A DNA stretch of 64,000 nucleotides from IMGVR_UViG_3300028920_000022:394730-458729; one strand, 5' to 3'. Positions 24,512 to 62,373 are shown, counted from the first letter of the stretch. Program-made: numbers and translations. The notes: generated by a model not told the origin, from the letters alone.

Positions 24512-24626
24512 GCACAAATTAATACTCTTTTTCTTAGCTTCCATTTCCATAATACATTAGATGTGTCAACCGTTTTTATATGGGATGTGTCAATCGTTCC
24601 TATTACTTTCCCATTAACTATAATGT

Positions 24627-43474: not shown

Positions 43475-43476
43475 TG

Positions 43477-43612: not shown

Positions 43613-43696
43613 TTATGCACATATCAGAGTTCTTTTGAGGATAATAGAAACCTGTAATGTTTGTTGATAATAATCATAGTAAGGGAATGGGGGCAT
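43613..43696 (-). CDS. Mini-protein, ICA C-terminal family (27 aa; not in track)
   Basis: MPPFPYYDYYQQTLQVSIILKRTLICA*. Confidence 0.45.
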   Translation of the reverse strand: MPPFPYYDYYQQTLQVSIILKRTLICA

Positions 43697-43755
43697 AAAT
43701 ACGTACACAACCAATAATAATTGGTGGGTTTAGGTTTCTCGACAAAACCGTACTA

Positions 43756-43944
43756 TTATACCTGTAGATCTTCCGTTTTTTCTTCTTGAGCAGAGGCTAT
43801 TTTGATTATGCTTTTAGATTTTGCTAAATTGATTATTTTTTCATGGCTACGCTTTAGAACGTCAGTTACGTTATCACAATGAGAATAATCATTAATCAAA
43901 TTATTAACTTTTTCTGCTGCTTCAAAATATTCTTCGGAACTCAT
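43756..43944 (-). CDS. Small hypothetical protein
   Basis: IKIAS motif. Confidence 0.55.
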   Translation of the reverse strand: MSSEEYFEAAEKVNNLINDYSHCDNVTDVLKRSHEKIINLAKSKSIIKIASAQEEKTEDLQV

Positions 43945-43954
43945 AATATGCCCT

Positions 43955-44146
43955 TTATTTCTTTTCTTCCAATTCCCTAGCTTTTACATGTAGTTGTGCC
44001 GCAAGCTCTTTTAGAACTTCTTCAAGGTCTTTTAATCCGCCTTTGGCTTCATATTCTTTAGCTAAATCCCAAACGCGGTCTGCTGCCTCGCGGAAACATT
44101 CGTGTTCGTTTTTATGTCGCATATCATAATGATTTTTTATGCACAA
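43955..44146 (-). CDS. Small hypothetical protein
   Basis: Helical acidic ORF. Confidence 0.55.
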   Translation of the reverse strand: MCIKNHYDMRHKNEHECFREAADRVWDLAKEYEAKGGLKDLEEVLKELAAQLHVKARELEEKK

Positions 44147-44183
44147 ATTATGGTCGTTCTATATAATTTTAGAATTAATTGGG

Positions 44184-44342
44184 TCATGCGCAAATCAAAA
44201 CACGTCGGGGTGGAGTGGCGTTTTTTATAAGACGAAAAATATTAGCGTCTTCCTCTTGCTCTATTTCCCATTTGCAACGCTGAACTAATGTGTCCAATAA
44301 GTTCTTAGGCGCAGATGTGTATGGTACGAGAGAATCTGACAT
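44184..44342 (-). CDS. Mini-protein (52 aa), capsid-helix-like, ICA family (not in track)
   Basis: MSDSLVP...QRCKWEIEQEEDANIFRLIKNATPPRRVLICA*. Confidence 0.6.
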   Translation of the reverse strand: MSDSLVPYTSAPKNLLDTLVQRCKWEIEQEEDANIFRLIKNATPPRRVLICA

Positions 44343-44366
44343 ATTTAATTAGAATCGGTAACGAGG

Positions 44367-44513
44367 TTAAGCACATATATTTGTTGTTCTTTTGTTTCGG
44401 TCGATAATATTGAATCTTCTTCTTTTGACATCTGATATACGAATTGTGGGATTTTGAATTATTTCAAACGATGGAATTTGAACCCGCTTGCCATAAATTT
44501 TGTTTTTACTCAT
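44367..44513 (-). CDS. Mini-protein (48 aa), capsid-fragment-like, ICA family (not in track)
   Basis: MSKNKIYGKRVQIPSFEIIQNPTIRISDVKRRRFNIIDRNKRTTNICA*. Confidence 0.65.
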   Translation of the reverse strand: MSKNKIYGKRVQIPSFEIIQNPTIRISDVKRRRFNIIDRNKRTTNICA

Positions 44514-44533
44514 CCATAATTAGCGGACTGTAA

Positions 44534-44947
44534 CTATTTTTTGCTCGACTTCTTTTTCTTGAGTTTGCTGCTGTTTCTCCAAGTCTTTTTGCCCTCGAAT
44601 TTATCGCGAACTGAGGCGCAGAAAGCTTCTGGGCTATCCATATGCTTTTTCATTTTTTCTACGCACTCGGTAAAAGGATGTTCTTCACCCTTCATCATAG
44701 TACGCGAGTACTGTTTGACGGACTTTTCTTTCCATCCTGGAGGTTTCTTGCTCCAGGGTTTTCTTTTGGCTATTTTAAGGAAATAATCGGCTAAGGCTAA
44801 TATTGCCTTACTCTTTTTTGATGGAAAATGCTTTGTACAATAAAATCCACCAAATTCGTCACATAATGGATCCCCGGATTCACAGGGGTCATACCAATAA
44901 TTAGTTTCTGCTCCACAAATTGTACATTTACCCACAGTTGCCGCCAT
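44534..44947 (-). CDS. Basic hypothetical protein
   Basis: CTIC; YFLKIA motif; HPFTECVEKM...FCA. Confidence 0.6.
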   Translation of the reverse strand: MAATVGKCTICGAETNYWYDPCESGDPLCDEFGGFYCTKHFPSKKSKAILALADYFLKIAKRKPWSKKPPGWKEKSVKQYSRTMMKGEEHPFTECVEKMKKHMDSPEAFCASVRDKFEGKKTWRNSSKLKKKKSSKK

Positions 44948-44977
44948 AAAGAATTAAGAATACACTGAAATGCGGCG

Positions 44978-45247
44978 TTATGCACAAATGGTAGTTTTTC
45001 TCTTCGATCCACAAAAGAAACCGGTAGGAAAATATACCGGTTCCACAACTATAGGCATGTAGTCTCGAAAAATATTCGTTTTTTGTTCTACAAATTCTCC
45101 AAACGGAGTTTTTGTAAGAGTTTCGTTAGAAATTAATATTGGAGCTTTTTCGTAATAATACAACTTCCCATAGTGTTTTTCTTTAGGTTTTAGAAGCAAA
45201 CTAGTTGGCGAAACTACTAGGAGTTGTTGCGGAGGAGTTATAATCAC
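44978..45247 (-). CDS. Hypothetical protein, ICA family
   Basis: Ends KRKTTICA*. Confidence 0.6.
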   Translation of the reverse strand: MIITPPQQLLVVSPTSLLLKPKEKHYGKLYYYEKAPILISNETLTKTPFGEFVEQKTNIFRDYMPIVVEPVYFPTGFFCGSKRKTTICA

Positions 45248-45828
45248 TTTTTGAATAATTCCATGGCATGTTCATTACAGGCTTCCCAAAACTCCTTAGA
45301 CACACAACAACTTTTTTCAATACCATTGATACAAAGTTTGATTTCAAGTTCTCCGGTAGAATCTAACTCTTTTCCTATACCAAAACCTATTTCGCTAGCA
45401 TCGTCACAAAACTGATCCGCCAATCTGTTTGCCCAAGATTCTATACTTTCGTCGTTTTGTTCAGCACATTTTCGTATAACTTCTCCGGCAAGCTTTTCCA
45501 TTTCTGTGGAAACCGGAGCTGTTATATCAAAGTTTTTAATATACTCTTCTAACTCGGTTAGTTTTTGCTCGATTTGAAGTTGTTCCCAATATTCAGCTGG
45601 CGCCGGTTTTCTGTCATAAAAGTCTAAACCCTTTTTTTCGTCATCGTCCATACACATTTGTATAGCTTCACCAAGGGCTTTTACTGATTGCTGAATCCCT
45701 TTTCCTTGGGAAACTATGTCAGTAGTTAGGCAGTGTCCTACCCAAGTGTCAGGAATATCTTCGCTGGGTGTGAAAACACAAACCAAAGACGGTTTGCTGC
45801 GTACGATCGGGCGCTTTTTCATTGTCAA
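45244..45828 (-). CDS. HicB-like N-terminal domain protein
   Basis: WVGHCLTTDIVSQG..I..S...L.EAI..C pattern. Confidence 0.55.
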   Translation of the reverse strand: MTMKKRPIVRSKPSLVCVFTPSEDIPDTWVGHCLTTDIVSQGKGIQQSVKALGEAIQMCMDDDEKKGLDFYDRKPAPAEYWEQLQIEQKLTELEEYIKNFDITAPVSTEMEKLAGEVIRKCAEQNDESIESWANRLADQFCDDASEIGFGIGKELDSTGELEIKLCINGIEKSCCVSKEFWEACNEHAMELFKK

Positions 45829-46421
45829 ATTTTTGTTTGTTCTTTGTAGTTTATGCTACATTTTTCTTGTGTTAAAATCTGATTAAATTCGCTGTTAAGA
45901 GCATTTTCCACAAGATCCAAGTCTTTTCTAGGAAAATACACAGAGATATTTAGCTCATATTGTATTGGCCAAGTTATGTTGCCAGAACCATCTAAGATAA
46001 TGTCTGGATAACCGCTAAAATGCCAAGCGCCAAATGGATTGTTTAAGCTGGCGTATTTTTGTACTATGGTTAGGAACTTGTCTATCGAGGTTTTGTCAAA
46101 TTCAACCCATACCATGTTTACTGGCACCATATTATGGTGTTGGCAACTATTCAAAGTTTTGATTCCCAATTTCCAACACAGCAAAATTATATTTGCAATT
46201 TCTTTATCTATTTCGGCTGACATTTTGTCGTATTGAACGAGAACTGTTTTGTGTGGTTTAAGTTTTTGAGCCCTAATTTTCGTTTGTTCTACCCGCTCCA
46301 TCCACACTTTTCCACGTAAATCTGGAGGATCGCGTTTGATAATGATTTTGGTACCATCGCTCAAATAAATACATGTTGGCGATTGACGAGTAATGTATGC
46401 CTTAGGATTTTGTTTGCTCAT
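45825..46421 (-). CDS. Hypothetical protein
   Basis: IDKEIA.II...WKLGI.T..SCQ phage motif. Confidence 0.6.
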   Translation of the reverse strand: MSKQNPKAYITRQSPTCIYLSDGTKIIIKRDPPDLRGKVWMERVEQTKIRAQKLKPHKTVLVQYDKMSAEIDKEIANIILLCWKLGIKTLNSCQHHNMVPVNMVWVEFDKTSIDKFLTIVQKYASLNNPFGAWHFSGYPDIILDGSGNITWPIQYELNISVYFPRKDLDLVENALNSEFNQILTQEKCSINYKEQTKI

Positions 46422-46433
46422 TTTTTTTGTTTG

Positions 46434-46510
46434 TCGGGACGGCTGGAGTTGAACCAGCGTGCAACCAACTACTCTTTCAACCGCTTATCAGGCGGAGGAG
46501 ATACGTCCCG
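46434..46510 (-). tRNA. Atypical tRNA-Ile(GAT) lacking a D-arm
   Basis: CGGGACG/CGTCCCG acceptor, CCGC-CTGATAA-GCGG, GCTGG-TTCAACT-CCAGC; 8 nt replace the D-arm; 22-nt variable region. Confidence 0.75.
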
Positions 46511-46512
46511 CT

Positions 46513-46734
46513 TTATTTCACTTTTTTCAAACTCAATTCAAACTCAGCAGTTGTAGGCTGCCAAGCATCACGGGTAGTCTTGTCCCATACCAATATCCGA
46601 ATAACACCAGGAATAGTAGGATCAAGCCTGTGACTTTCTAAACCTATTGAATACCCTTGCCAATTGATACCATCTCCTAAATAATCTATTGCGGCTCGCA
46701 CAAAAGATTCTACTGAATCGTCTATTTTAGACAT
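46513..46734 (-). CDS. Small hypothetical protein
   Basis: ORF between coaC and the tRNA. Confidence 0.5.
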   Translation of the reverse strand: MSKIDDSVESFVRAAIDYLGDGINWQGYSIGLESHRLDPTIPGVIRILVWDKTTRDAWQPTTAEFELSLKKVK

Positions 46735-47378
46735 GCCTTAACCATTTCTGCTATATCTTTTACACCAGCCATAGCACCCATACCAACTGTTCCGCAAGCT
46801 AGTTTCTTAGATACAGGATATACTATGGTAAAATTATGTCTACGTACTTCGTTGTAGTTATATGCTTTATCGTAGTGTCGGTAGAAATGCCTTTCCCAAA
46901 GCACATTTAACTGTTCGGTTGTAATCGGATGCTCCCACATGTCTGTGTTCATAGCGGGAGCTACAATAATAGGTTTCGTAATAGGATAAGCTCTATAAAT
47001 ACAAGTTAATAGGTTGTCACATATTCCGTTTGCCATTTTTGCCAGCGTATTTGCTGTTAATGGCGCAATAACAAATACATTCGCCCAATCTTTTAACTCA
47101 ATGTGTAAAACTGGATCCCCTATATCCATCCATAACCATTCTTGTTCGTCAGTTAGAATATCAATACCGCCTCCCCAAAAAGTAAGCTTCTTACCTTGTG
47201 ATATCGGCAGGTTATCGATCAGCTGGCAACGAGTATCTTGGTCTCTGATTTGTTCAACAATATTAAGAGCAGACTTGGTAGCAACAACTTTAACGTCACC
47301 AAGCTTACTGAGTTCCGAATGCAGCTCTATTGTTTTTATTGCAGCAACTGATCCGGTTATTCCAAGTAGAATGTTCAT
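46722..47378 (-). CDS. coaC: Phosphopantothenoylcysteine decarboxylase (HFCD flavoprotein)
   Basis: ILLGITGSVAA, PVLHIEL..WA..FVIAPLTANTLAKMANGICDNLLT, APAMNTDMWEHP, K.LACG..GMGAMA. Confidence 0.88.
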   Translation of the reverse strand: MNILLGITGSVAAIKTIELHSELSKLGDVKVVATKSALNIVEQIRDQDTRCQLIDNLPISQGKKLTFWGGGIDILTDEQEWLWMDIGDPVLHIELKDWANVFVIAPLTANTLAKMANGICDNLLTCIYRAYPITKPIIVAPAMNTDMWEHPITTEQLNVLWERHFYRHYDKAYNYNEVRRHNFTIVYPVSKKLACGTVGMGAMAGVKDIAEMVKACLK

Positions 47379-47647
47379 TCTCGCTCCGAGAATGAAAGGG
47401 CTTTTTCTGGTATTCCCGCTTGTATGAATTTTTCCCGAAGATCCATGTTGTCCATAGAGGTATAGAATTCGAATTCATCTTTATTTTCAGAAAGTTCCCA
47501 GCCACGATCATAATCCTCCTTCAATATTGCTGAAAAGATTTTATCATAACCACGAACAATGGTTTTTTGAATGTCAGTAAGCCACTTCTTTTTTACAACA
47601 AAAGAAGAGCTAGAAGAGTTTGATACGAATCCGGTTCTAATTTTCAC
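47375..47647 (-). CDS. FVSNSSSSSF-leader family protein (copy 5)
   Basis: GTG start; KIRTGFVSNSSSSSFVV. Confidence 0.7.
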   Translation of the reverse strand: MKIRTGFVSNSSSSSFVVKKKWLTDIQKTIVRGYDKIFSAILKEDYDRGWELSENKDEFEFYTSMDNMDLREKFIQAGIPEKALSFSERE

Positions 47648-47877
47648 GTTATCACCTCTTTGATAGCACATTCACTACAAGACATTATTTCATTAACTTT
47701 TTTGATTTCTATGTTATTATACACTCCATAATTTGTTTTGTAGGTTATCGTTTGAGATGCATGGGTCGGCTCATTTTTGTCCAACAAATTAAACGCCTCT
47801 GTGCCACAGCATTCGCATATCCATTTGTAGACATGGGCATATAAACGTTCTTTTCTAATCCACACGTGGTCTTGCAT
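47644..47877 (-). CDS. Small Cys protein, IKDIIE-like end
   Basis: WICECC; ends SCSECAIKEVIT. Confidence 0.6.
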   Translation of the reverse strand: MQDHVWIRKERLYAHVYKWICECCGTEAFNLLDKNEPTHASQTITYKTNYGVYNNIEIKKVNEIMSCSECAIKEVIT

Positions 47878-48551
47878 TAGTATGTCTCCAACAGATCAAT
47901 TAGTCGTTTATACAGGTTTTTTCTGTCCACCTCGTAACAATAATTGCCGGTTATTACATAGGCTCTTTCCCGTGACCATTCTAAACAGTTGGCAATCATA
48001 ATGTTAGCATTCGAGGCTTCTCGGCTCTTTTTAGCTATCTCTATTAATTCCTCATCTTTCATTCCAACTTGTAACTTAAATTTTACCAATATTCCCTTGA
48101 AACCCCAAGGGTCACGAATCTTATCTATTATTTTTTCTGTTGGTTTTAGTTTTAAAAACAAATCTGAATGGTTGGATTTAATTTTGGCGCTATTATCCAC
48201 AGATTTCATTGAAAAAGTACGATCTCCATATCTATAAGTCTCTTCTCCAACCAACACTTCGGATACTTGATAATCGCTTATTGCCGCAGAATGAATTATT
48301 ACATCATATTTCTTTTTAGTAATTTCTTTTTCCATAGCAGAATATAATTCGTCGTATGTTTTGAATGCTATAAATTTTACGTCAGGATCTGTTTCAGATT
48401 GCATTGGGGAGTTGTTTAACAGAGTTACTTTATGTTTTTTGATCGCTTCGTTTGCTATATTAACAGCTGTTCTGCCGCGAAATATGTTGGTTATCCCACG
48501 AACCTTATCTATAGGCACAAGGGTGCTTCCGCCGGTAATTAAAATTTTCAT
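47877..48551 (-). CDS. coaB: Phosphopantothenate-cysteine ligase
   Basis: ILITGG.T..PIDKVR.ITN...G, IHSAAISDY, L.LKPTEKII, LVKFKL, .N..IAN. Confidence 0.85.
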   Translation of the reverse strand: MKILITGGSTLVPIDKVRGITNIFRGRTAVNIANEAIKKHKVTLLNNSPMQSETDPDVKFIAFKTYDELYSAMEKEITKKKYDVIIHSAAISDYQVSEVLVGEETYRYGDRTFSMKSVDNSAKIKSNHSDLFLKLKPTEKIIDKIRDPWGFKGILVKFKLQVGMKDEELIEIAKKSREASNANIMIANCLEWSRERAYVITGNYCYEVDRKNLYKRLIDLLETY

Positions 48552-48653
48552 GTGGCTCTCAGTTCTAATTTGTTCCAAGTTTCAGTTTGACAAGGAGCCT
48601 TGGTGGTGTGTAAAATAGAAAATCTATATCCCCAATCTATTTTAATAATACAA

Positions 48654-48782
48654 CTAGAAACTGTCCCAAAATCTTGTAAGTGTACGCATAGCGAAGTCTT
48701 CTGAATATCTATTATATTTTTCGTCTCTATTAGCTCCGACAATTAATCCGTCGTAACTCCAGGAGGTAATTAACGTACACAT
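48654..48782 (-). pseudogene. Truncated NRDE/TANGO2-family N-terminus (42 aa; not in track)
   Basis: MCTLITSWSYDGLIVGANRDEKYNR matches the MC...ANRDE signature; TAG after 42 codons. Confidence 0.55.
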
Positions 48783-48810
48783 ATTTGGCAAACTATTCTG
48801 GTTGGAAACT

Positions 48811-50898: not shown

Positions 50899-50912
50899 AT
50901 ACGAATGCGGAA

Positions 50913-51215
50913 TTATTCAGTTTCCTGCGTTATAACCCTTTTTAGGTCTTCTACGCTTACTATACAGGGCTCTTCGTCTGTATTTTGCTCATCATTATCA
51001 TCCACATATTTCTGCGCAAACATGGATATTTTGGTTTCTTGTTCTTGTGGCAACCTACCGCCCCAATTGTTAGCTACGTTAACCCTGTAACAATCTTGAT
51101 TATAGATTACGCACACCCACAGATGGGAAAATTCTCGAACCAATTCGTGTCTTAGGCTGTTGGCTAACTCACGATTAGTAGTTGTGGCTACAAAAAAATC
51201 TTTGCTATTTTCCAT
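50913..51215 (-). CDS. Hypothetical protein
   Basis: ORF in operon. Confidence 0.6.
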   Translation of the reverse strand: MENSKDFFVATTTNRELANSLRHELVREFSHLWVCVIYNQDCYRVNVANNWGGRLPQEQETKISMFAQKYVDDNDEQNTDEEPCIVSVEDLKRVITQETE

Positions 51216-51304
51216 TAAATCACCACTAGTATTACCAATATAGTAAAAAACGCTCCTACCAAAAAATCAAACCTATTCCCATATAACCAACCTGTTTTTT
51301 TCAT
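51215..51304 (-). CDS. Small membrane peptide (29 aa; not in track)
   Basis: MKKTGWLYGNRFDFLVGAFFTILVILVVI*; ATGA and TAATG coupling at both ends. Confidence 0.5.
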   Translation of the reverse strand: MKKTGWLYGNRFDFLVGAFFTILVILVVI

Positions 51305-51862: not shown

Positions 51863-51944
51863 TTTATCTTTCCTATGTGTTGAAATGTGGTTGTGACGCG
51901 CTAGTAATGTTCTACTAAAACGTGGTATAAATGCTCATATTAAT

Positions 51945-54159: not shown

Positions 54160-54163
54160 CTCT

Positions 54164-54658: not shown

Positions 54659-54666
54659 TGTTATCC

Positions 54667-56148: not shown

Positions 56149-56160
56149 CTCAGAATAATG

Positions 56161-56574
56161 CTATTTTATTACGTCCTCGATGATGAAGTTATTTTTCCAC
56201 CCATTGAACCACTTTTCGGCTTTTCTCATGCATAAAATCATGTCAAGTTCGACATTGGAAATGGCTTGGAGTCGGTTGAACCAGTCTAAAAACAATTCAC
56301 GAAAATCTTCGTTTATCTCTTCTGATTTTGTAACAGTGTAAGTTAATTTTCCAGGAATAATTTCATCACTTTTGCAAAACAAAGCAACCTCTAATTTATG
56401 TGCGTAGTGTTCAGGATTAGGATCATCGTAGTATCTTGTCCCTGATACCACTTCTGGAATTAATCTGTACAGGTGCATGTTTAAAACATAACCCGGGCAA
56501 TATATGGAAAACTCTGACCGATCAGCTTTTTGACCGCCTCTGTTTATGTTGATGGTAGTTATATATGGTTTCAC
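56161..56574 (-). CDS. Hypothetical protein, IKDIIE-like end
   Basis: Ends FIIEDVIK. Confidence 0.55.
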   Translation of the reverse strand: MKPYITTININRGGQKADRSEFSIYCPGYVLNMHLYRLIPEVVSGTRYYDDPNPEHYAHKLEVALFCKSDEIIPGKLTYTVTKSEEINEDFRELFLDWFNRLQAISNVELDMILCMRKAEKWFNGWKNNFIIEDVIK

Positions 56575-56833
56575 TTTTCCTCGGAAAATGTTTGTACCAA
56601 GCGATTACAGCTACAATGGAAAAATTCATCACATAATTAACCATCAGCACAAAGTCAGAAGAATAATTAGCTAGAGTATAGCAAATATAGCAGAACTCTC
56701 CAATCAGCCAAAGCCAAATTGTGAGGGTCGCCATCCCATTAGCATGTCCTTCTTTTATGGCTTTCAGCATCTGCGGAAGCCCAGAGAAGGAAAAGCATAC
56801 CATACCGATAAGCCCAACTACCACTAAATTCAT
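56522..56833 (-). CDS. PQ-loop/SemiSWEET-like membrane protein
   Basis: GLIG..CF....LPQM.K..K.G.A.G; three TM helices. Confidence 0.75.
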   Translation of the reverse strand: MNLVVVGLIGMVCFSFSGLPQMLKAIKEGHANGMATLTIWLWLIGEFCYICYTLANYSSDFVLMVNYVMNFSIVAVIAWYKHFPRKSETIYNYHQHKQRRSKS

Positions 56834-56860
56834 AACGATAAATGGACAAAAATTAGTAGG

Positions 56861-56933
56861 CGGGTCCTGCGAGATTTGAACTCGCGTCTAAAAGCTTTAA
56901 AGGCTTTCGCTCTCGCCGCTGAGCTAAGGACCC
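56861..56933 (-). tRNA. Ochre suppressor tRNA (anticodon TTA), Lys-like body
   Basis: GGGTCCT/AGGACCC acceptor, GCTC/GAGC D-stem, AAAGC-CTTTAAA-GCTTT anticodon arm, GCGAG-TTCAAAT-CTCGC T-arm, G73. Confidence 0.92.
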
Positions 56934-57253
56934 AGAGCCAAATTAAGTTTGCTACATAGCTTCTTAGATTTCCTACCGGGCTCTAAAGCAATTGCTGTAA
57001 TCTCATCATCGAAATCTGGTTCTCTAAATATAGAAAACTTGATTTCCTTTTCTTTCGCCAATCCCATCAATTCCTTTAAACTATTCTCGTTTTCTGTTTC
57101 TAATATAACTAAGTAGTTTGAGGAATTGAACCACAACAAATCTTCCTGCGGATGATCGTTTACGAAAGCTCTCAGTGCATGACAGGATTGTGCTGCCCTA
57201 GCTCCTGGGGAAAGGTCTGTTCTAGTGACAATATACAGTTTGTTTTAAGCCAT
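56924..57253 (-). CDS. Peptidyl-tRNA hydrolase II-like protein with in-frame TAA at codon 3
   Basis: GAGGA SD; ATG GCT TAA AAC AAA CTG TAT ATT...; KLYIVTRTDL.PG..AAQSCHA, YLVIL, FREPD, TAIAL motifs. Confidence 0.82.
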
Positions 57254-57254
57254 G

Positions 57255-57788
57255 TCAATCCTCGTCATCGTAGTCTGATTCTTCCGCAATTTCTTTCCGT
57301 TCTTGAGCACACGCCCTGAAATAACTGGATATCCTTTCTACTATAGTTTCTGGAATGTCTTGTTTACGAAACTTTTCTTTCCACCCTTCGTATGGTGTGT
57401 CGCCAGAAATCCAATGTCTTTCTCCAACAGTAAAACAGGGAGGGTCGCTATATATCCGACCTAAATCTGTTTCAATATATGGCCAAATCTCAAGTGGTGA
57501 GTCATTACAGCAGCCGCAGTTGTGTCTAATTTCGCAATCATTGACTCGGTTATTGAGTGAAGCAGAACAAAACCTTTCAGTTTTCCACCTATTTATATGA
57601 CGGCGCAAATCCGGGTATTTTTCGCTTCTTTTTATAAGCAAGTCTAGTTCTTGTTGTTTTTTCTGGACCTCTTTTTCTAATTCGTCTATTATACCCGGAA
57701 TACTGTCTTTCCAATTTTGGTATTCCCGTTGTTCTTCGGGGGTCATTTTAAAGTAGTCTTTGTCGGTATATTTGCTGTAGTCTTTCAT
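57255..57788 (-). CDS. Hypothetical protein
   Basis: RHNCGCC.DSPLE..PY motif; ATGA-coupled to the upstream gene. Confidence 0.7.
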   Translation of the reverse strand: MKDYSKYTDKDYFKMTPEEQREYQNWKDSIPGIIDELEKEVQKKQQELDLLIKRSEKYPDLRRHINRWKTERFCSASLNNRVNDCEIRHNCGCCNDSPLEIWPYIETDLGRIYSDPPCFTVGERHWISGDTPYEGWKEKFRKQDIPETIVERISSYFRACAQERKEIAEESDYDDED

Positions 57789-58108
57789 GCTGCCTCCTGA
57801 GATATTCTGTTAATTCGTACAAAGAGCCAATCACGAACTTCCTTCCACTCAGGTCCTGAAACAGAAAACTCAATATCAGAGGCTCTGCAAATATATTTTG
57901 CAATATCTAGAGCCAATCCGGTATAAAACGTAGTCCTTCCAGTTGAGCAATGTTTGTCTTCGTTCGTGGTTCGTTCCATAACCTCATAAGGCAAACCACG
58001 CAAAAAACCATATGCCAACAATCTACAGCGTTGTTTCCAACCGCCAGCTTTAGCACCTTCAATCACCCAAAGTCTAAGTTGAGCAATAGCATTTTTTCTT
58101 GTATTCAT
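57785..58108 (-). CDS. Hypothetical phage protein (first gene of the pth operon)
   Basis: AGGAG SD; RCRLLAYGFLRG.PYE..E motif. Confidence 0.7.
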   Translation of the reverse strand: MNTRKNAIAQLRLWVIEGAKAGGWKQRCRLLAYGFLRGLPYEVMERTTNEDKHCSTGRTTFYTGLALDIAKYICRASDIEFSVSGPEWKEVRDWLFVRINRISQEAA

Positions 58109-58124
58109 GTCAATCTCCTAAAAA

Positions 58125-58202
58125 TCAAAAAGTTACAAACAGTTTTTCTGGAAACTTTTGTTTAGGAGGTCCACGAATTTGATTAATTTACGAGTCGTGC
58201 AT
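58125..58202 (-). promoter_or_regulatory. Leader uORF MHDS*INQIRGPPKQKFPEKLFVTF* (ochre + RGPP arrest-like motif) with attenuator-like hairpin
   Basis: Translation of 58202-58125; TAA at 58190-58188; CAAAAGTT...AACTTTTTG pairing followed by a T-rich run and the SD. Confidence 0.65.
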
Positions 58203-58242
58203 GTTGTATTTATTCTTGTTTATTAGTTGACAGCTCGACAAA

Positions 58243-58731
58243 TCATCTATGGACCCTATTAATTGCCACATCTGGCTTATCTGGCTTATCTGGCTTATCT
58301 GGCTTATCAGGTTTATCAGGTTTGTCTGGCAAAACAGGTGCAGGTTTATCTACGGAAGCCGTTCCAATAGCTTTAATTTTCTTATCTTTATTATTTTGAA
58401 ATGTTGTCAAACGAGTATCTATTTTTTCTTGAAACAAATTTATAATATCAAGAACATCTTGTTGTCTAGGTCTTTCTGGTAGTGGAATTTGCCGCATTTC
58501 TAGGTAACTATTGTTTAGCTCCTGTTTAATATTATTACAACAGCCAGACTGTATTTGGTTGTATAAAAGCATTAAATCTACTAATGCAGCTTTTGCGTCT
58601 TTATCTAAATTATCTTGTTTTACACCGTATATTCTTCTTCCAATGATTTTGCGCAAACTTTTGTATCCGGCAAGTAGCCTATTTCCGCTTCTTATCGTAT
58701 TTAGAATAATTATTTTATTTTTGGTGTTCAT
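58243..58731 (-). CDS. Hypothetical protein with PDK repeats
   Basis: ATGA-coupled. Confidence 0.6.
   Translation of the reverse strand: MNTKNKIIILNTIRSGNRLLAGYKSLRKIIGRRIYGVKQDNLDKDAKAALVDLMLLYNQIQSGCCNNIKQELNNSYLEMRQIPLPERPRQQDVLDIINLFQEKIDTRLTTFQNNKDKKIKAIGTASVDKPAPVLPDKPDKPDKPDKPDKPDKPDVAINRVHR
58271..58330. repeat. 9-bp tandem repeat (TCTGGCTTA)n encoding PDK
   Basis: About 6.7 units. Confidence 0.9.
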
Positions 58732-58916
58732 TCTATTATGTTTTTGATATCGAAATCCCTATCAGAAATGGTACAAGGTCTTAGCCTTTTGTGCGGAATA
58801 TAGAAATTTCCTTTATAGACAGTAGTTCGTAGTTGTCTTTTTGTTTTTCCACATTTTAAGCAACGTTTTTGATTCCAGCCATTGTCGGTTTTCCATTTGT
58901 GCTTATAGTTCGCCAT
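58728..58916 (-). CDS. Small Cys protein, IKDIIE family
   Basis: CLKC; ends DIKNIIE. Confidence 0.6.
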   Translation of the reverse strand: MANYKHKWKTDNGWNQKRCLKCGKTKRQLRTTVYKGNFYIPHKRLRPCTISDRDFDIKNIIE

Positions 58917-59526
58917 TTTTAGTTGCCTGCATGTAGTGGTTTGCAACCCAAGGAAGATATTTCCTCCACTCTTGGCTCTGTTCATAACGCTTTTTATCAA
59001 AAATAGGATTACGCAACTTATCCAACACGATAAGTTTTGTTGGGTCTAAAACACAAACTTCGTCACGATCACCTGAAGTAATAAACCCCTTTAATGCAGA
59101 ATACCCTTGGGATCGCAAAATTATATTTGTAGCCAAATGTTTGTTTTGAATTTCGCTTTTATCAATTTTATCGATTAATGGTCGTTTTTCGAAAAAACCC
59201 CAGCCTCTAACATCTAAAGCTTTTCCAATAAAATCAAAAATAAACATGTTTTGGTATAAACTTACCGATTGCATATTGCTTTCAAATGAACCTATGTCAT
59301 TATTTCTTAATCTTTCTATGACCCTGTCACTAATTTCATAACCGTAGATACCAACGGGATTAAGTCCAGGATATCTTGGACGTGTATTTATGCCCAATTT
59401 ATCGGCAGAAGTGAAGTGTAAATATTTTCCAACATACTTTTCCAGTGTATAAAATACATCTTCCAGCTCCACACCCTCACGTTCATATCGGGTTTTTCCC
59501 ATTTTCTCCATACCTTTATGTGTCAA
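58903..59526 (-). CDS. Stand-alone paralog of the giant protein's N-terminal ART-like domain
   Basis: YLHFT..KLGIN...PVGIYGY...GYSAL...DEVCVLD. Confidence 0.6.
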   Translation of the reverse strand: MTHKGMEKMGKTRYEREGVELEDVFYTLEKYVGKYLHFTSADKLGINTRPRYPGLNPVGIYGYEISDRVIERLRNNDIGSFESNMQSVSLYQNMFIFDFIGKALDVRGWGFFEKRPLIDKIDKSEIQNKHLATNIILRSQGYSALKGFITSGDRDEVCVLDPTKLIVLDKLRNPIFDKKRYEQSQEWRKYLPWVANHYMQATKNGEL

Positions 59527-59756
59527 TATTGGATGGAAGGTTGTGTATCTATATCGTCCAGATTTTCTCTTATAAAATATAGATATCGCTCAAATTTCTT
59601 GGGGTTTTCTAGAAGTATTGTATATTCGGCGGGAGAAATTCCTAAGTATTCGTGTAGTGTCAAATTAGATTTGGACAAATTCCAATCTGTGATTTCGTCG
59701 TGGATATCCTCAAACTCAACCTCCCCTCTTAGGTAGCGTGTAAGAAAGTTTTCCAA
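59523..59756 (-). CDS. Small phage protein
   Basis: DIHDEI..W......LHEYLGIS..EY. Confidence 0.65.
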   Translation of the reverse strand: MENFLTRYLRGEVEFEDIHDEITDWNLSKSNLTLHEYLGISPAEYTILLENPKKFERYLYFIRENLDDIDTQPSIQY

Positions 59757-59766
59757 ACAGTCCTTT

Positions 59767-60279
59767 TTAGAGTATCGTTTTAATTTCCGGCAAATTGCGG
59801 CAGGTTTGTTTATAATCTAAACCATAACCAATCACAAATTTATCTTCAATCGTAAAACCAAGATAATCTATTTTTACTTCTTTCACTGTTTTTGCCGGTT
59901 TATGCAGTAATGAACATAACTTTACGGACTTTGGTTTTCTAGCTGATAGCATATCCAAAAGATATCTGGATGTCAAGCCTGTATCTACTACATCTTCCAC
60001 AATTAACACATGTTCATTTTCTATGGAGAAATTTAGATCGTGTGTAATTTGTACGAGACCACTAGATTTATTATCATCACCATAGCTTTGAACACCCATA
60101 AATCCTATTTTCATCGGTGTTTTTATTTGTCGTGATAAATCAGCCGTAAATATAAAACTACCCTTCAAAATACAAATCAATACTATTGATTTCCCGTCGT
60201 AATCCTTGGTAATCTGTTTGCCTAACTGTTTGATTTTATTACGTATTTTACGTTCTGAAATTAAAGTTTTCATGCGCAA
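59767..60279 (-). CDS. hpt: Hypoxanthine phosphoribosyltransferase
   Basis: ICILKGS.IF.ADL, VLIVEDVVDTGLT, LLHKP, FVIGYGLDY...RNLP. Confidence 0.95.
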   Translation of the reverse strand: MRMKTLISERKIRNKIKQLGKQITKDYDGKSIVLICILKGSFIFTADLSRQIKTPMKIGFMGVQSYGDDNKSSGLVQITHDLNFSIENEHVLIVEDVVDTGLTSRYLLDMLSARKPKSVKLCSLLHKPAKTVKEVKIDYLGFTIEDKFVIGYGLDYKQTCRNLPEIKTIL

Positions 60280-60360
60280 ATTGTAATCCTTCGTGGTCTG
60301 TTCGTTTGTAGCTCATTCAGATAGGCGTATTTGAAAAACATTTCGAAGATATTTTTTGAG

Positions 60361-60489
60361 TCAAGCACAGATTATGGTCCTTCGTGGGTGGTAATATCTA
60401 ATTGTTTGCCAATCATATTGACTCATCCAAATTTTGGAAGATATTAGGGACCAACTATTGATTTCTTTAAATACTTCTTTCTTGTCCAT
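60361..60489 (-). CDS. Mini-protein, ICA family
   Basis: Ends HPRRTIICA*; start uncertain (track start overlaps the MTase). Confidence 0.5.
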   Translation of the reverse strand: MDKKEVFKEINSWSLISSKIWMSQYDWQTIRYYHPRRTIICA

Positions 60490-60532
60490 AACGAATCTTT
60501 TGTGTGAACTTAATGTGACGGTTTTATTTTTG

Positions 60533-61630
60533 TTAGCATAAAACCTTTTTAAAATAGTAAAAGAAACGAGGAAAATCAGATCCGGGTTGTTGTAATGACT
60601 TTTTAATTTTAATGATTTCCAGTTTACCTGCGGTTTTTTCTTCAATCCAGCGTTTGTTAGGATAAGCTAATTTTCTATTACCACTTCCTTTTTGGGGATG
60701 ATCGTTGTTATTATACGTTTCTATCTCAATAATAACAATACCATCAATTTTAACAAGATTACTAACTAATGTAAAAAACTTTTCTTGACTATCTCCAAAA
60801 TAGTGAAACGTGGATGCGCAAAAAACAACATCAAAATTTTCGGAGCTATCAAAATTTAAAGCGTTGCAACATATAAATTTAACATTTTGTTTTCTAAATA
60901 CTCGATTATTTAATCTATTAGCAATACACAAAACATCTGGATTCACATCTATACCTACAATACTGCCCGAAGTCTGCTTGGCAATTTCAAAACAAAAAAA
61001 GCCATTATTACAGCCCACGTCTAAAAATGACTGTCCATCAGTTATTTCTATTTCTGCCAACTGTAATTTCGTTGGTGACATTGAATCACCGCGGTGATTA
61101 AAATCTGTAAATGATTGGTAGTTAATGCCCTTTTTTAATTTAGAAAAATCTATTCGTTTTAAGTCATCATGAGATTTAATACAAGCTTCTGGTATTGTTT
61201 TTTCGTCGTCAGTATGAAAATTAATTAGATTACGTTTATAAACAAGGGTATGTTGTTTTTGGAACTGTAATCTGCATATTTCATTGCACCCTAGTTCTTT
61301 AAGAATTTCAATCAATTCTTTTTCTATAGAAGATATAACGTATCCCTCTATCAAAACATCTACTATGCCTTCGGCTTTCTCGATTCCCTTTTGCAAGATT
61401 TTTTTCGTCACATGCAGATATCTAGTTTTATTCCATCTAAGGCTAGAACAGTGTAGCTGAATGTTTCTAACGAAACCCACCACTTTTTCATATTGAGGAT
61501 CTCTAAAAAAAGTATCCAAACAATATCGTTGTACGTTAGGGTTGTGTTCTTTGTAATAATGAGTCCAAGTTGTTTTCCCAGAATTGGGCATTCCTGCACA
61601 TAAAAACACCCGTAAATATTGAGCTGTCAC
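60533..61630 (-). CDS. P-loop kinase-like domain fused to class I SAM methyltransferase
   Basis: AGMPNSGKTT; FLDVGCNNGFF, GIDVN, FDVVFC.STFHY. Confidence 0.8.
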   Translation of the reverse strand: MTAQYLRVFLCAGMPNSGKTTWTHYYKEHNPNVQRYCLDTFFRDPQYEKVVGFVRNIQLHCSSLRWNKTRYLHVTKKILQKGIEKAEGIVDVLIEGYVISSIEKELIEILKELGCNEICRLQFQKQHTLVYKRNLINFHTDDEKTIPEACIKSHDDLKRIDFSKLKKGINYQSFTDFNHRGDSMSPTKLQLAEIEITDGQSFLDVGCNNGFFCFEIAKQTSGSIVGIDVNPDVLCIANRLNNRVFRKQNVKFICCNALNFDSSENFDVVFCASTFHYFGDSQEKFFTLVSNLVKIDGIVIIEIETYNNNDHPQKGSGNRKLAYPNKRWIEEKTAGKLEIIKIKKSLQQPGSDFPRFFYYFKKVLC

Positions 61631-61761
61631 TGGTATGCCCTATCGCCATATTTCCTAAACAATCTAATCGATAACATTAGTGCTAATGCCTCTGTTTGTT
61701 TACTGGGCTCTAATACTCTTAAAATAATTTAGAATGCAGCAGACGAGAGTAAATTCGTTTT

Positions 61762-61920
61762 TTAGGCACAGATTGTTGTGGTCCTTCTCTTGCCCCAATG
61801 TACATTAGAAAAAGCGGAACCCAGCATTAACATGGCTTTTTGCATCTTAATCAAGTTCTGTATATGGACATTGAGAATCTTTTCTGTGAATTTGTGGTGA
61901 CAAGTTGTTTTTGTTAGCAT
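61762..61920 (-). CDS. Mini-protein, ICA family
   Basis: Ends GKRRTTTICA*; start uncertain. Confidence 0.5.
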   Translation of the reverse strand: MLTKTTCHHKFTEKILNVHIQNLIKMQKAMLMLGSAFSNVHWGKRRTTTICA

Positions 61921-61936
61921 AATGTACAATTTGTGT

Positions 61937-62188
61937 ATGAGAATTTTTGTTACATTTCCTGAGGAAGATTTTGGTAGTGCTACGCTAGAAATACATGCAT
62001 CAACATCTTCTAATGTATTAGAACGATTACCTATAGCTTTGCGGAATATTGGTGTCAAATCTTTCTACGATTATATTTTTCAAAACGGAGATAAACTAAT
62101 TATTCAAGCTAAAATCGTAGACTATGACAAAAATAAACTTTCCTCTACAAAAGCTATAAACATACTAAAATCATTAAGCACAGATTAG
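61937..62188 (+). CDS. Hypothetical protein (opposite strand)
   Basis: Protein-like composition; no clear SD. Confidence 0.4.
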   Translation: MRIFVTFPEEDFGSATLEIHASTSSNVLERLPIALRNIGVKSFYDYIFQNGDKLIIQAKIVDYDKNKLSSTKAINILKSLSTD

Positions 62189-62296
62189 AACTCTATTTGG
62201 AGCGATTTCTATTAGCCCATAATCAACAAGACAATCTAAGAGATTACTAAGAACATCTGTGCAATTCTTTTGGACTATTACATTTCTTACGCACAT
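62174..62296 (-). CDS. Mini-protein (40 aa), ICA family (not in track)
   Basis: MCVRNVIVQKNCTDVLSNLLDCLVDYGLIEIAPNRVLICA*. Confidence 0.55.
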   Translation of the reverse strand: MCVRNVIVQKNCTDVLSNLLDCLVDYGLIEIAPNRVLICA

Positions 62297-62373
62297 ATTA
62301 AAACCCTTTTGGCGGGAACAATGCTAATTTCTATTATTTGAAAATCGTTGGGTATATAATTCCATCCATTCAT
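62287..62373 (-). CDS. Mini-protein (28 aa), ICA family (not in track)
   Basis: MNGWNYIPNDFQIIEISIVPAKRVLICA*; ATGA-coupled to the upstream gene with AAGGA SD. Confidence 0.6.
   Translation of the reverse strand: MNGWNYIPNDFQIIEISIVPAKRVLICA

What the first reader, a model, noticed from the sequence alone, without database searches (positions are those of the whole stretch)
43613..62373. Eight unrelated mini-proteins share a C-terminal [KR]R-x(2-3)-ICA tag
C-termini: 43613 KRTLICA, 44184 PRRVLICA, 44367 KRTTNICA, 44978 KRKTTICA, 60361 RRTIICA, 61762 RRTTTICA, 62174 NRVLICA, 62287 KRVLICA. Five of the eight are missing from the ORF track. Codons and stops vary synonymously (TGT/TGC, GCN, TAA/TGA), so selection is on the peptide. 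Possible roles: ClpX/Lon-type degron, docking motif, or modified Cys.
Basis: partly seen in the sequence, partly recalled or inferred. Interest (0 to 1): 0.75.

Follow-up and report, generated by a model that had tools for sequence, protein, structure and literature searches.

The report
Shared ICA tail on phage mini-proteins
A 459-kb phage from marine sediment, and its few known relatives, end a dozen or more otherwise unrelated tiny proteins with the same tail (basic-basic-x-V/T-L-I-C-A-stop). The tail is a real, selected peptide tag; what reads it is unknown, and it most resembles a C-terminal degradation or docking signal.

Summary
All eight C-termini are as described. The window holds four more (24508, 44137, 44305, 60270) and the 458,729-bp phage genome three more (15 in all). 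The strict motif occurs 13 times, against 0.1 expected in 5th-order Markov simulations.

Selection acts on the peptide. Across 33 distinct tails from our phage and relatives' contigs from at least four other phages, Ile, Cys, Ala and the stop use every synonymous codon. Leu uses both TTR and CTN, Arg both AGR and CGN. No single-residue variant of I-C-A exists. My first idea, a promoter, is rejected.

Orthologous mini-proteins in the relatives keep both body and tail. Every small member of the roughly 110-aa family found among 1.84 billion representative proteins ends in ICA. The tail is clade-specific: it is absent from 1.5 Mb of other jumbo phages and at chance level in GTDB genomes.

The ORFs are 16-112 aa and tightly chained; 12 of 32 tails contain the next ORF's ATG.

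Function is inferred only. Most likely this is a free-carboxyl recognition tag, possibly an ssrA-like non-polar degron (the phage encodes a cellular-type ClpP). Docking, Cys modification and nascent-chain roles remain open. An AviCys/LanD route is excluded, and a link to the radical SAM enzymes is weak.

The parts
24508..24648 (-). Tail ORF of 46 aa from its ATG, ending KRVLICA-TGA. It lies 47 nt upstream of the next gene (23639..24460).
   Evidence: codon score of the body at the 97th percentile of the non-coding null
43613..43696 (-). Tail ORF of 27 aa from its ATG (33 aa if the TTG at 43714 is used), ending KRTLICA-TAA. It lies 63 nt upstream of tRNA-Gly(TCC).
43476..43549 (-). tRNA-Gly(TCC) directly downstream of a tail ORF. 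Relatives also have tRNA genes interleaved with their tail arrays.
44137..44187 (-). Tail ORF of 16 aa, ending YRTTIICA-TAA. Its ATG overlaps the TGA of the preceding tail ORF (ATGA overlap). The orthologue in L096 is 19 aa and ends PRTCLICA.
44184..44342 (-). Tail ORF ending PRRVLICA-TGA. It is 52 aa from the ATG at 44342, but orthologues start at the position of the TTG at 44297 (37 aa).
   Evidence: body score at the 99th percentile
44305..44376 (-). Tail ORF of 23 aa, ending SRTIHICA-TAA. Its ATG lies inside the preceding tail (ATATG). Orthologues of 26-27 aa in L096 and L104 end SSYICA and SSFICA.
44367..44513 (-). Tail ORF of 48 aa, ending KRTTNICA-TAA. Orthologues in L096, L104 and L106 are 61-67% identical over the whole length.
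44978..45247 (-). Tail ORF of 89 aa (GTG start overlapping the upstream stop), ending KRKTTICA-TAA. It belongs to the 89-112 aa family, all of whose known small members end in ICA.
60270..60368 (-). Tail ORF of 32 aa from GTG (23 aa from the ATG at 60341), ending RRITICA-TGA. The TGA overlaps the ATG of the phosphoribosyltransferase gene (ATGA).
60361..60489 (-). Tail ORF of 42 aa from its ATG (94 aa only if the TTG at 60645 is used), ending RRTIICA-TGA.
61762..61920 (-). Tail ORF of 52 aa from its ATG (98 aa only if the TTG at 62058 is used), ending RRTTTICA-TAA.
62174..62296 (-). Tail ORF of 40 aa, ending NRVLICA-TAA. Its ATG lies inside the preceding tail. Probable orthologue in L106, ending KKVHICA.
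62287..62373 (-). Tail ORF of 28 aa, ending KRVLICA-TAA. Its ATG overlaps the stop of the upstream 156-aa gene. The orthologue in L104 has a longer linker and ends RRKVLICA.
   Evidence: body score at the 97th percentile

Best explanation
Shown: the window is the last 64 kb of a 458,729-bp jumbo phage from a marine-sediment metagenome. The phage encodes at least 15 small proteins (16-89 aa), 12 of them in the window. Their bodies are unrelated, but their last residues follow one pattern: usually Pro or a basic residue, then K/R-R, one or two residues, V/T, L, and an invariant I-C-A followed at once by a stop codon. The tail is kept by selection on the amino acids. The same tail sits on orthologous and additional mini-proteins (up to 112 aa) in contigs from at least four other related phages. 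The genes form tightly chained arrays among accessory, nucleotide-metabolism and tRNA genes, and the next start codon is often inside the tail.

Inferred: the tail is a short linear recognition tag that must carry the free alpha-carboxylate and is read by one common partner. The most likely reader is an AAA+ protease. On this reading VLICA-COOH acts like the non-polar ssrA/LAA-type C-terminal degron, so that a whole set of small, probably early-acting proteins is short-lived, or competes for the protease. The phage's own cellular-type ClpP would work with a host unfoldase.

I put about 0.9 on 'translated, selected C-terminal peptide tag' and about 0.35 on 'degron'.
For: Peptide-level selection. 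In 33 distinct tails, Ile is ATT 16, ATA 9, ATC 8. Cys is TGT 21, TGC 12. Ala is GCA 14, GCT 7, GCC 6, GCG 6. The stop is TAA 21, TGA 8, TAG 4. Leu at -4 is TTG 7, TTA 7, CTA 4, CTG 2, CTT 1. Arg uses both AGR and CGN. No one-residue variants of ICA occur behind a basic pair.

Conservation in relatives. Orthologues with conserved bodies and tails are found in relatives. An exhaustive profile search finds only four small members of the roughly 110-aa family, and all end in ICA.

Coding signals. Codon-usage scores of the bodies are above the non-coding median in 14 of 15 cases. Packing is operon-like, with ATGA and TAATG overlaps. All 11 tails that use ATA for Ile open the next ORF.

Strictly C-terminal. 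Every copy is followed by a stop, and the linker length varies between orthologues.

Degron-like features, from established knowledge. Five consecutive non-polar C-terminal residues ending in a small residue destabilise proteins (Parsell, Silber and Sauer 1990). ClpX reads LAA-COOH and basic MuA-type tails (Flynn et al. 2001, 2003). C-terminal Ala tails are ClpXP degrons (Lytvynenko et al. 2019).

Protease present. The phage encodes a ClpP scoring 204 bits to Pfam CLP_protease and 225 bits to the NCBIfam ClpP model, far above its 88-bit match to head-maturation proteases.

Gene context. Tagged genes sit with non-structural genes, not with the capsid module.
Against: Nothing measures protein stability here. 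No ClpX, Lon, PDZ or S41 reader was found in the phage, and the host is unknown.

Absolute invariance of Ile, Cys and Ala in 33 tails is stricter than expected for a degron, where L/V/I and A/S/C usually interchange. It hints at chemistry on the Cys or at a very exact pocket.

The basic residues upstream differ from the acidic ssrA context. ClpP is common in jumbo phages that lack the tail, so it is not specific evidence.

No RNA or protein data exist for this phage.
Confidence: 0.35

Rival explanations
1. Non-proteolytic docking or address label. The tail binds one hub protein of the phage or host, in the manner of PTS1/Pex5, PDZ ligands, encapsulin cargo-loading peptides or the T4 capsid-targeting sequence. 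It would bring many different mini-proteins to one place or machine.
For: One short terminal peptide is shared by unrelated proteins. A free C-terminus is strictly required. I-C-A is invariant, with an extended strand-like V/T-L-I-C-A. The tail is clade-specific, which suggests a clade-specific reader. A giant HEAT-repeat protein is syntenic with the arrays in three lineages.
Against: No candidate reader was identified, and no PDZ or S41 domain was found. The tagged genes lie among accessory, replication-type and tRNA genes rather than with capsid genes, which argues against virion cargo. The HEAT link is synteny only.
Confidence: 0.25
2. Site of enzymatic modification of the Cys, RiPP-like or a lipid or other adduct. 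The basic-x-V/T-L-I-C-A motif is the recognition sequence of a modifying enzyme, for example one of the phage's radical SAM or SPASM proteins.
For: Cys is invariant in 33 of 33 tails. One tail ORF (genome 166811..166900) lies 21 nt upstream of a 489-aa radical SAM gene. A radical SAM/SPASM-like protein lies in the window at 34434..35483. There are many precursor-like small ORFs with one conserved segment.
Against: The genome has about five radical SAM genes, so one adjacency among 15 ORFs is expected roughly 15% of the time.

In relatives the adjacency is broken. L011 has a gene inserted in between, and L010 keeps only an ORF-less remnant.

Both radical SAM families are widespread in phages without tails: 1930 homologues, 80 loci without the motif, and phrog_7293.

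No LanB/PEARL-like or YcaO gene was found (the LanB probe rang in no control genome, so it is uninformative). The neighbouring flavoprotein is a genuine phosphopantothenoylcysteine decarboxylase, and Cys is not the last residue, so the LanD/AviCys route is out. The bodies are conserved like functional proteins, not like leaders. The complex prediction gave no answer.
Confidence: 0.15
3. The tail acts as a nascent chain inside the ribosome. ICA-stop, with basic residues 5-7 positions upstream, slows termination or recycling. This would couple or regulate translation of the next cistron in the chained arrays.
For: The conserved part is the last roughly 8 residues plus the stop, the portion that sits between the peptidyl-transferase centre and the upper tunnel. 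The ORFs can be as short as 16 aa. 12 of 32 tails contain the next ORF's ATG, and most others have it within 30 nt. Invariance of the three residues nearest the transferase centre is typical of arrest motifs such as SecM, TnaC and SpeFL (established knowledge).
Against: The bodies of the mini-proteins are conserved between orthologues at 61-67% identity, unlike typical leader peptides. Three tail ORFs are followed by tRNA genes, where there is no translation to regulate. Proteins up to 112 aa carry the tail. A ribosome stalled on the stop would cover, not free, a start codon 4-10 nt upstream.
Confidence: 0.12
4. A DNA- or RNA-level element (promoter, terminator, processing or recombination site) that merely translates to the same peptide because it contains a stop triplet.
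For: This was my first reading. The motif always lies just upstream of a gene or tRNA, in the gene's orientation. Two ORF-less remnants persist in relatives: KVLICT-stop in L010 and LCA-stop in L104.
Against: Variation falls on third codon positions and on synonymous first positions (CTN/TTR, AGR/CGN). All three stop codons are used, and conservation ends exactly at the stop. Spacer differences are 6 or 9 nt, with one of 8. There is no excess of sigma-70-like promoters in either region, no clear excess of terminators (5 against 2.0 +/- 1.3 in one region, 0 in the other), and no Rfam match. Orthologous ORFs are conserved over their whole length.
Confidence: 0.03

Closest known systems
ssrA/ClpX 'LAA'-type and other non-polar C-terminal degrons (tmRNA tag; Parsell-Sauer WVAAA tails; MuA RRKKAI; RqcH Ala tails)
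   Same: Strictly C-terminal and needs a free carboxylate. The last five residues are non-polar and end in Ala. Basic residues lie upstream, as in MuA and in cyanobacterial ssrA tags. One tag can be attached to any protein. A ClpP is encoded by the phage.
   Different: The tag is genetically encoded on about 15 genes, not added by tmRNA. It ends I-C-A, not L-A-A, with an invariant Cys. It is far less degenerate than natural ClpX substrates. No unfoldase or adaptor was found, and no stability data exist.
Terminal cargo or address peptides: T4 capsid-targeting sequence of internal proteins, encapsulin C-terminal cargo-loading peptides, PTS1 (SKL-COOH)
   Same: A short terminal peptide is shared by otherwise unrelated proteins of one virus or compartment and read by one receptor. 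PTS1 is likewise a C-terminal tripeptide preceded by basic residues.
   Different: The T4 sequence is N-terminal and is cleaved off. Encapsulin peptides are Gly/Ser/Leu-rich and sit next to the shell gene. Here the genes lie among accessory genes, not capsid genes, and no receptor is known.
RiPP precursor families with one enzyme and many precursors (e.g. prochlorosins; radical SAM/SPASM-modified peptides with conserved C-terminal motifs; mycofactocin MftA)
   Same: Many small ORFs share one conserved segment that contains a Cys. Radical SAM genes are present in the genome, and one is adjacent.
   Different: The conserved part is only 7-8 residues at the extreme C-terminus. The variable parts are conserved between orthologues like independent proteins. 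There is no dedicated, co-distributed maturase, and the ORFs are scattered over 290 kb.
Ribosome arrest peptides acting at or near termination (TnaC, SpeFL, SecM, MifM)
   Same: Function would reside in the last residues plus the stop codon. The upstream sequence is variable, and the ORFs lie directly in front of other cistrons.
   Different: No sequence similarity to known arrest motifs. The bodies are conserved. Some copies precede tRNA genes. Stalling was not tested.

Membership tests
ssrA-like / ClpX C-motif-1 degron | Lies at the extreme C-terminus with a free alpha-carboxylate | tested here: met
   All 33 tails are followed at once by TAA, TGA or TAG. Linker length varies, but the tail stays terminal.
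ssrA-like / ClpX C-motif-1 degron | Last residues are non-polar and end in small residues (LAA, VAA) | tested here: inconclusive
   V/T-L-I-C-A is non-polar and ends in Ala, but position -2 is always Cys and -3 always Ile. No LAA or VAA variants occur.
ssrA-like / ClpX C-motif-1 degron | Confers ClpXP- (or ClpAP-, FtsH-) dependent instability | not testable with these tools
   Needs half-life measurements in protease mutants.
ssrA-like / ClpX C-motif-1 degron | A cognate protease is available | tested here: inconclusive
   A cellular-type ClpP is present in the phage. There is no ClpX-like unfoldase beyond a 14.9-bit AAA_2 hit, and the host is unknown.
RiPP precursor peptides | Precursor genes sit next to, and are co-distributed with, a dedicated modifying enzyme | tested here: not met
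   Only 1 of 15 is adjacent to a radical SAM gene, and that adjacency is lost in L010 and L011. The radical SAM families are common in phages without tails. No YcaO was found; the LanB probe rang in no control genome, so it is uninformative.
RiPP precursor peptides | The peptide carries a post-translational modification | not testable with these tools
   Needs mass spectrometry. The complex prediction gave no answer.
LanD / AviCys substrates (EpiA-, MrsA-type) | Cys is the last residue, and a LanD-type flavoprotein is present | tested here: not met
   Ala follows the Cys in all tails. The flavoprotein at 46722..47378 matches AtHAL3a/PPCDC (E = 5e-40), with the PAMNTDMW motif and the catalytic ACG cysteine, and is paired with a CoaB-like ligase.
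CaaX prenylation box | Cys at the fourth position from the C-terminus (C-a-a-X) | tested here: not met
   Cys is at the second position from the end in 33 of 33 tails.
Ribosome arrest / leader peptides | Only the C-terminal arrest motif is constrained, and the upstream peptide is free to vary | tested here: not met
   Orthologue bodies are 59-67% identical over their whole length.
Ribosome arrest / leader peptides | The ribosome stalls at the motif | not testable with these tools
   Needs toeprinting or ribosome profiling.
DNA regulatory repeat (promoter, terminator, PeSL-like cassette) | Conservation is at the nucleotide level, independent of reading frame | tested here: not met
   Third codon positions and synonymous first positions vary freely, while the amino acids are invariant. 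There is no promoter excess in either region, no clear terminator excess (5 against 2.0 +/- 1.3 in one region, 0 in the other), and no Rfam match.
Capsid or encapsulin cargo-targeting peptides | A short terminal peptide is shared by unrelated cargo proteins | tested here: met
   The bodies are unrelated by BLASTP except for one pair.
Capsid or encapsulin cargo-targeting peptides | Cargo genes are linked to shell or structural genes, and the proteins are found inside the particle | tested here: inconclusive
   The genes lie with tRNA, CoA, purine-salvage, methyltransferase, DNA-polymerase and radical SAM genes rather than with the protease/capsid module. Packaging itself cannot be tested.
Arbitrium / Phr-type signalling pro-peptides | An N-terminal secretion signal, with the mature peptide at the C-terminus | tested here: not met
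   By eye, no N-terminal signal-peptide-like segment is seen in the listed ORFs, and the bodies are conserved as proteins. No receptor gene was sought systematically.

The most novel reading that the evidence does not exclude
A bacteriophage clade uses its own C-terminal 'address code'. An invariant tripeptide I-C-A-COOH, preceded by a basic patch, is written onto a dozen or more unrelated mini-proteins. It is read by a still unidentified, clade-specific reader. It would not be a generic host degron.
Probability: 0.3. Interest if true: 0.85.

Novelty: new variant of a known kind. Interest (0 to 1): 0.68.

Why it matters
Small phage proteins are the least understood part of phage genomes, and most are thought to act on the host early in infection.

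Here at least 15 of them in one genome, and more than 30 distinct copies across the clade, carry one invariant, genetically encoded C-terminal tag. This gives three things. It is strong comparative evidence that ORFs as short as 16-28 aa are real genes, most of which gene callers skip. It offers one experimental handle, an 8-residue peptide, for fishing out a common reader, whether protease, receptor or modifying enzyme, and so for assigning a shared fate to a whole set of orphan proteins. It may also yield a portable tag for controlling protein fate.

Tried and rejected
1. Promoter or other DNA motif. This was my first reading, from position and orientation. It is rejected by the codon pattern, the conserved ORFs, the lack of a promoter excess or clear terminator excess, and no Rfam hit.

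2. Read-through or in-frame fusion with the downstream gene. Only some spacers are multiples of three, and in-frame stops intervene.

3. RiPP precursor of the adjacent radical SAM enzyme. The adjacency is not conserved. The enzyme family is widespread without tails. There are about five radical SAM genes in the genome. The complex prediction gave no answer.

4. AviCys/LanD route through the nearby flavoprotein. It is a true PPC decarboxylase.

5. The SPASM protein as a clade-specific maturase. It belongs to the widespread phrog_7293. The 349-aa gene inside the L104 array is unrelated to it.

6. PDZ, S41, ClpX, LanB and YcaO readers in the phage: none found (the LanB probe rang in no control genome).

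7. Searches that found nothing.
- Close relatives in IMG/VR via the methyltransferase or the radical SAM protein.
- The KRVLICA-stop DNA pattern in IMG/VR: 0 hits.
- A metagenome scan with the 29-aa ORF: only the source contig.
- A profile of all tails against 5.8 billion proteins: only own proteins, because most ORFs are too short to have been called.
- GTDB genomes: 13 scattered single hits, at chance level.
- INPHARED DNA: no match.

8. Population variation. L094 and L095 are 100% identical copies. Other runs hold only fragments that do not cover the tails, and no RNA run exists.

9. AlphaFold2 of the 89-aa member gave mean pLDDT 37, which is uninformative. The ESM Atlas look-alikes scored below a useful level.

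10. Literature searches found no description of this tail.

Full report
WHAT THE WINDOW IS

The window is bases 394,730-458,729 of a single 458,729-bp contig. The contig is an IMG/VR virus record with a CheckV completeness of 100, 39.5% G+C, and no N. It is also known as Ga0272441_10000008 and comes from a marine-sediment metagenome.

Several features mark it as a jumbo phage of a bacterium:
- a phage-type DNA polymerase;
- a prohead-protease domain protein;
- RNase HII, a cellular-type ClpP and 16 tRNAs;
- no NCLDV capsid protein.

It has no close relative among deposited phages. There is no DNA match, and the polymerase is at most 33% identical to any of them.

THE OBSERVATION

The eight C-termini are exactly as reported. 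Scanning all six frames of the genome gives 16 stop-to-stop segments that end in ICA. Fifteen of these carry a basic residue or pair 4-6 residues upstream.
- Three are on the + strand elsewhere in the genome, with stops ending at 166900, 206393 and 206526.

All 15 lie on the coding strand of their neighbourhood. Forty 5th-order Markov simulations of the genome give 4.3 +/- 2.1 ICA-stop tails and 0.10 (maximum 1) matches to the strict motif. The observed numbers are 16 and 13. Chance is excluded.

DNA MOTIF OR PEPTIDE?

The motif always lies just upstream of a gene or a tRNA and in the same orientation, so I first took it for a promoter. The codon pattern refutes that.

In the 15 copies, every variable position of the last eight codons is either a third position or a synonymous first position. 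Examples are CTA, TTA and TTG for Leu, and CGA CGT against AAA AGA for the basic pair. The spacers differ by 6 or 9 nt, with one of 8. Conservation stops exactly at a stop codon, which can be TAA, TGA or TAG.

With the relatives added there are 33 distinct tails:
- Ile: ATT 16, ATA 9, ATC 8.
- Cys: TGT 21, TGC 12.
- Ala: GCA 14, GCT 7, GCC 6, GCG 6.
- Stop: TAA 21, TGA 8, TAG 4.
- Leu at -4: TTG 7, TTA 7, CTA 4, CTG 2, CTT 1.

No copy with a single amino-acid change in I-C-A occurs behind a basic pair in any of these sequences. Sigma-70-like promoter sites are not enriched in either region. Terminator-like sites number 5 against 2.0 +/- 1.3 in one region and 0 in the other. Rfam finds only tRNAs. 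Selection is therefore on the amino acids and on the position of the stop.

ARE THE ORFS GENES?

With the tail removed, the ORF bodies score above the median of non-coding ORFs in 14 of 15 cases on a codon-usage log-odds trained on the phage's long genes. Six reach the 95th percentile or higher.

The ORFs are packed like operon genes. There are ATGA, GTGA and TAATG overlaps with the upstream gene, and gaps of 1-30 nt to the next one. In 12 of 32 tails the next ORF's ATG lies inside the tail: ATATG at -10, or GCATGA at -4. All 11 tails that use ATA for Ile open an ORF of at least 15 aa, and most of those ORFs again end in ICA.

The strongest evidence is comparative.
- The 24/29-aa ORF at genome 166811..166900 has an orthologue in the same place in contig L011. 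That copy ends RRTLLICA and differs by synonymous changes.
- Homologues of the 137-aa protein at 44534..44947 led to syntenic contigs of two further phages: L096-L099, and L100/L101/L104.
- These contigs carry 8-9 and 7-8 tail ORFs. They include orthologues of our 48-aa, 37-aa, 23-aa, 28-aa and 89-aa ORFs. Where aligned, the 48-aa and 89-aa families are 61-67% and 43-59% identical over their whole length.
- L106 (1.2 kb) has three tails and L105 has one.
- A profile of the roughly 110-aa family, run against 1.84 billion representative proteins, finds only four small members. All four end in ICA.

These comparisons also correct some starts. The 52-aa ORF probably starts at the TTG at 44297 (37 aa). 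The 94- and 98-aa versions of two ORFs depend on TTG starts and are probably no more than 42 and 52 aa.

With the tail removed, only the adjacent pair 206247/206395 is paralogous by BLASTP. 'Unrelated mini-proteins' is therefore a fair description.

DISTRIBUTION

The tail is clade-specific.
- Eighty loci (1.53 Mb) of jumbo phages that share the 489-aa radical SAM family hold 3 ICA-stop tails, none with the motif.
- Two phages that share only the C-domain of the 137-aa protein have none.
- The pattern for KRVLICA-stop has 0 hits in IMG/VR and 13 scattered single hits in 596 Gb of GTDB genomes. That is at or below the chance expectation I estimate from the pattern's degeneracy (roughly 25). This one genome has two.
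- The consensus over 33 tails is [K/R/P] at -8, R/K at -7, T/R/S/K at -6, V/T at -5, L at -4, then I-C-A.

WHAT THE TAIL DOES

Nothing here measures function, so this part is inference. Six observations constrain it:
(a) the tail must be at the very C-terminus, and linkers vary in length;
(b) I, C and A are invariant;
(c) the five last residues are non-polar and preceded by positive charge;
(d) only small proteins (16-112 aa) carry it, about 8-15 per genome;
(e) their genes sit among accessory and replication-type genes and tRNAs, not with the capsid module;

From established knowledge, a non-polar C-terminal pentapeptide ending in a small residue is the classic determinant of rapid degradation. 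Examples are the Parsell-Sauer tails, ssrA LAA read by ClpX, and RqcH Ala tails. MuA shows that ClpX also reads basic C-termini. The phage encodes a ClpP that is clearly of the cellular type: 204 bits to Pfam CLP_protease and 225 bits to the NCBIfam ClpP model, against 88 bits to head-maturation proteases.

I therefore rank a degradation tag first, at about 0.35. On this reading the tail gives a set of small proteins a short life, or makes them competing substrates for a host protease.

Three things count against it:
- the invariance is stricter than a degron normally needs;
- there is no unfoldase, PDZ or S41 reader in the phage;
- ClpP is common in jumbo phages without the tail.

RIVALS

A non-proteolytic docking or address label (0.25) explains the invariance and the clade specificity equally well, but no reader is known. 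The giant HEAT-repeat protein that is syntenic with the arrays in three lineages is only a lead.

Modification of the Cys (0.15) is suggested by the invariant Cys and by one tail ORF lying 21 nt upstream of a radical SAM gene. Several results weaken it:
- that adjacency is expected by chance about 15% of the time, given about five radical SAM genes;
- it is broken in L011 and lost in L010, where only an ORF-less KVLICT-stop remnant remains beside a 31-bp duplication;
- both radical SAM families are widespread without tails;
- no YcaO gene was found, and the LanB probe rang in no control genome, so it is uninformative;
- the neighbouring flavoprotein is a genuine AtHAL3a-like PPC decarboxylase paired with a CoaB-like ligase, so a LanD/AviCys route is excluded;
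- the complex prediction for the radical SAM protein with the 29-aa peptide returned 'no answer' and is not evidence either way.

A nascent-chain role in termination or re-initiation (0.12) fits the chained cistrons and the embedded start codons. It fits poorly with the conserved bodies, the tails that precede tRNA genes and the 112-aa members.

A DNA- or RNA-level element is left at about 0.03.

NOVELTY

I found no description of this tail in the literature searched. C-terminal degrons, cargo peptides and conserved RiPP segments are known kinds. What is new is a genetically encoded, invariant ICA-COOH tag written onto many unrelated mini-proteins of one phage clade. I class it as a new variant of a known kind.

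LIMITS

- All relatives are metagenome fragments.
- The host is unknown.
- No transcript, ribosome or protein data exist.
- The structure prediction of the 89-aa member was useless, with mean pLDDT 37.
- Population data added nothing.

Noticed in passing
window 56859-56933 (-): A tRNA with anticodon UUA, which would read the TAA stop codon. Rfam scores it 71.5 bits, the best tRNA score in the window. TAA ends 44% of the long ORFs, and long genes show no in-frame TAA, so the genome does not look recoded. The tRNA's role is unexplained. About 64% of the tail ORFs end in TAA.
   Followed up: partly
genome 160404-160946 (+), outside the window (L001:353-1009): A cellular-type ClpP (204 bits to Pfam CLP_protease). 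It is distinct from the prohead-protease domain protein at genome 239873-243280. No ClpX-like unfoldase was found next to it or elsewhere in the genome.
   Followed up: partly
window 46722-47378 (-) and 47877-48578 (-): Split CoA-pathway genes. One is a PPC decarboxylase closest to plant AtHAL3a and human PPCDC. The other is a CoaB-like ligase. Both are syntenic with the tail arrays in three phage lineages and are probably auxiliary metabolic genes.
   Followed up: partly
window 32883-34076 (+): A TnpB (IS200/IS605-type RNA-guided endonuclease) gene, inserted on the opposite strand within the - strand gene block.
   Followed up: no
window 34434-35483 (-): A radical SAM-like protein with an unusual Cx7CxxC motif and a SPASM domain. 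It belongs to the widespread phage family phrog_7293 (E = 2e-104), whose function is unknown. It sits next to the 1727-aa HEAT-repeat protein.
   Followed up: partly
window 35480-40663 (-): A giant 1727-aa protein with HEAT repeats; the homologues in relatives are 2111-2165 aa. It contains an internal 132-nt repeat at 36581-36712 and 36824-36955 (83% identical). It is syntenic with the tail arrays.
   Followed up: no
window 1740-3146 (+) and 62837-63364 (-): A PARP1/2-like protein (WGR, regulatory and catalytic domains), and a protein with a weak, sub-threshold Macro-domain match (19.6 bits, cut-off 22). Together they would be an ADP-ribosylation writer and eraser/reader pair in a phage. The Macro-like gene lies just upstream of one tail cluster.
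   Followed up: no
L096 3336-4256; L104 4339-9863 and 17131-17203: In the relatives the tail arrays are interleaved with tRNA genes. L104 carries tRNA-Ile, -Cys, -Ala, -Thr (two) and -Arg, the residues of the tail, plus two tRNA-Gly. As a post-hoc estimate, finding Ile, Cys and Ala together among six kinds of tRNA has a probability of about 0.02. Our phage has only tRNA-Gly in this region.
   Followed up: partly
L010 723-846: In the closest radical SAM relative, the site of the tail ORF holds a 31-bp tandem duplication that includes the upstream gene's stop. It is followed by an ORF-less remnant reading KVLICT-stop. This is probably a decayed copy.
   Followed up: partly
L011 1-330 and 308-2046: The first roughly 125 nt of this contig are GC-rich and unlike the rest, which may be an assembly chimera. 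A GC-rich 518-aa gene and a 60-aa ORF are inserted between the tail ORF and the radical SAM gene.
   Followed up: no
proteins P0026 and P0090: Some homologues of the 489-aa phage radical SAM protein are about 800 aa and carry a LAGLIDADG_3 domain. That suggests intein insertions in this widespread jumbo-phage enzyme, which has a conserved N-terminal FATNSSSxHS motif.
   Followed up: no
window 45017-45044 (-): A terminator-like hairpin (10 pairs followed by a T run) lies inside the 89-aa tail ORF, about 35 nt upstream of its tail.
   Followed up: no
L104 about 7920-7975: A near-consensus sigma-70 promoter (TTGACA, 17 nt, TACAAT) lies directly after the last tail ORF of the array. It suggests that host RNA polymerase transcribes this region in the relatives.
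   Followed up: no
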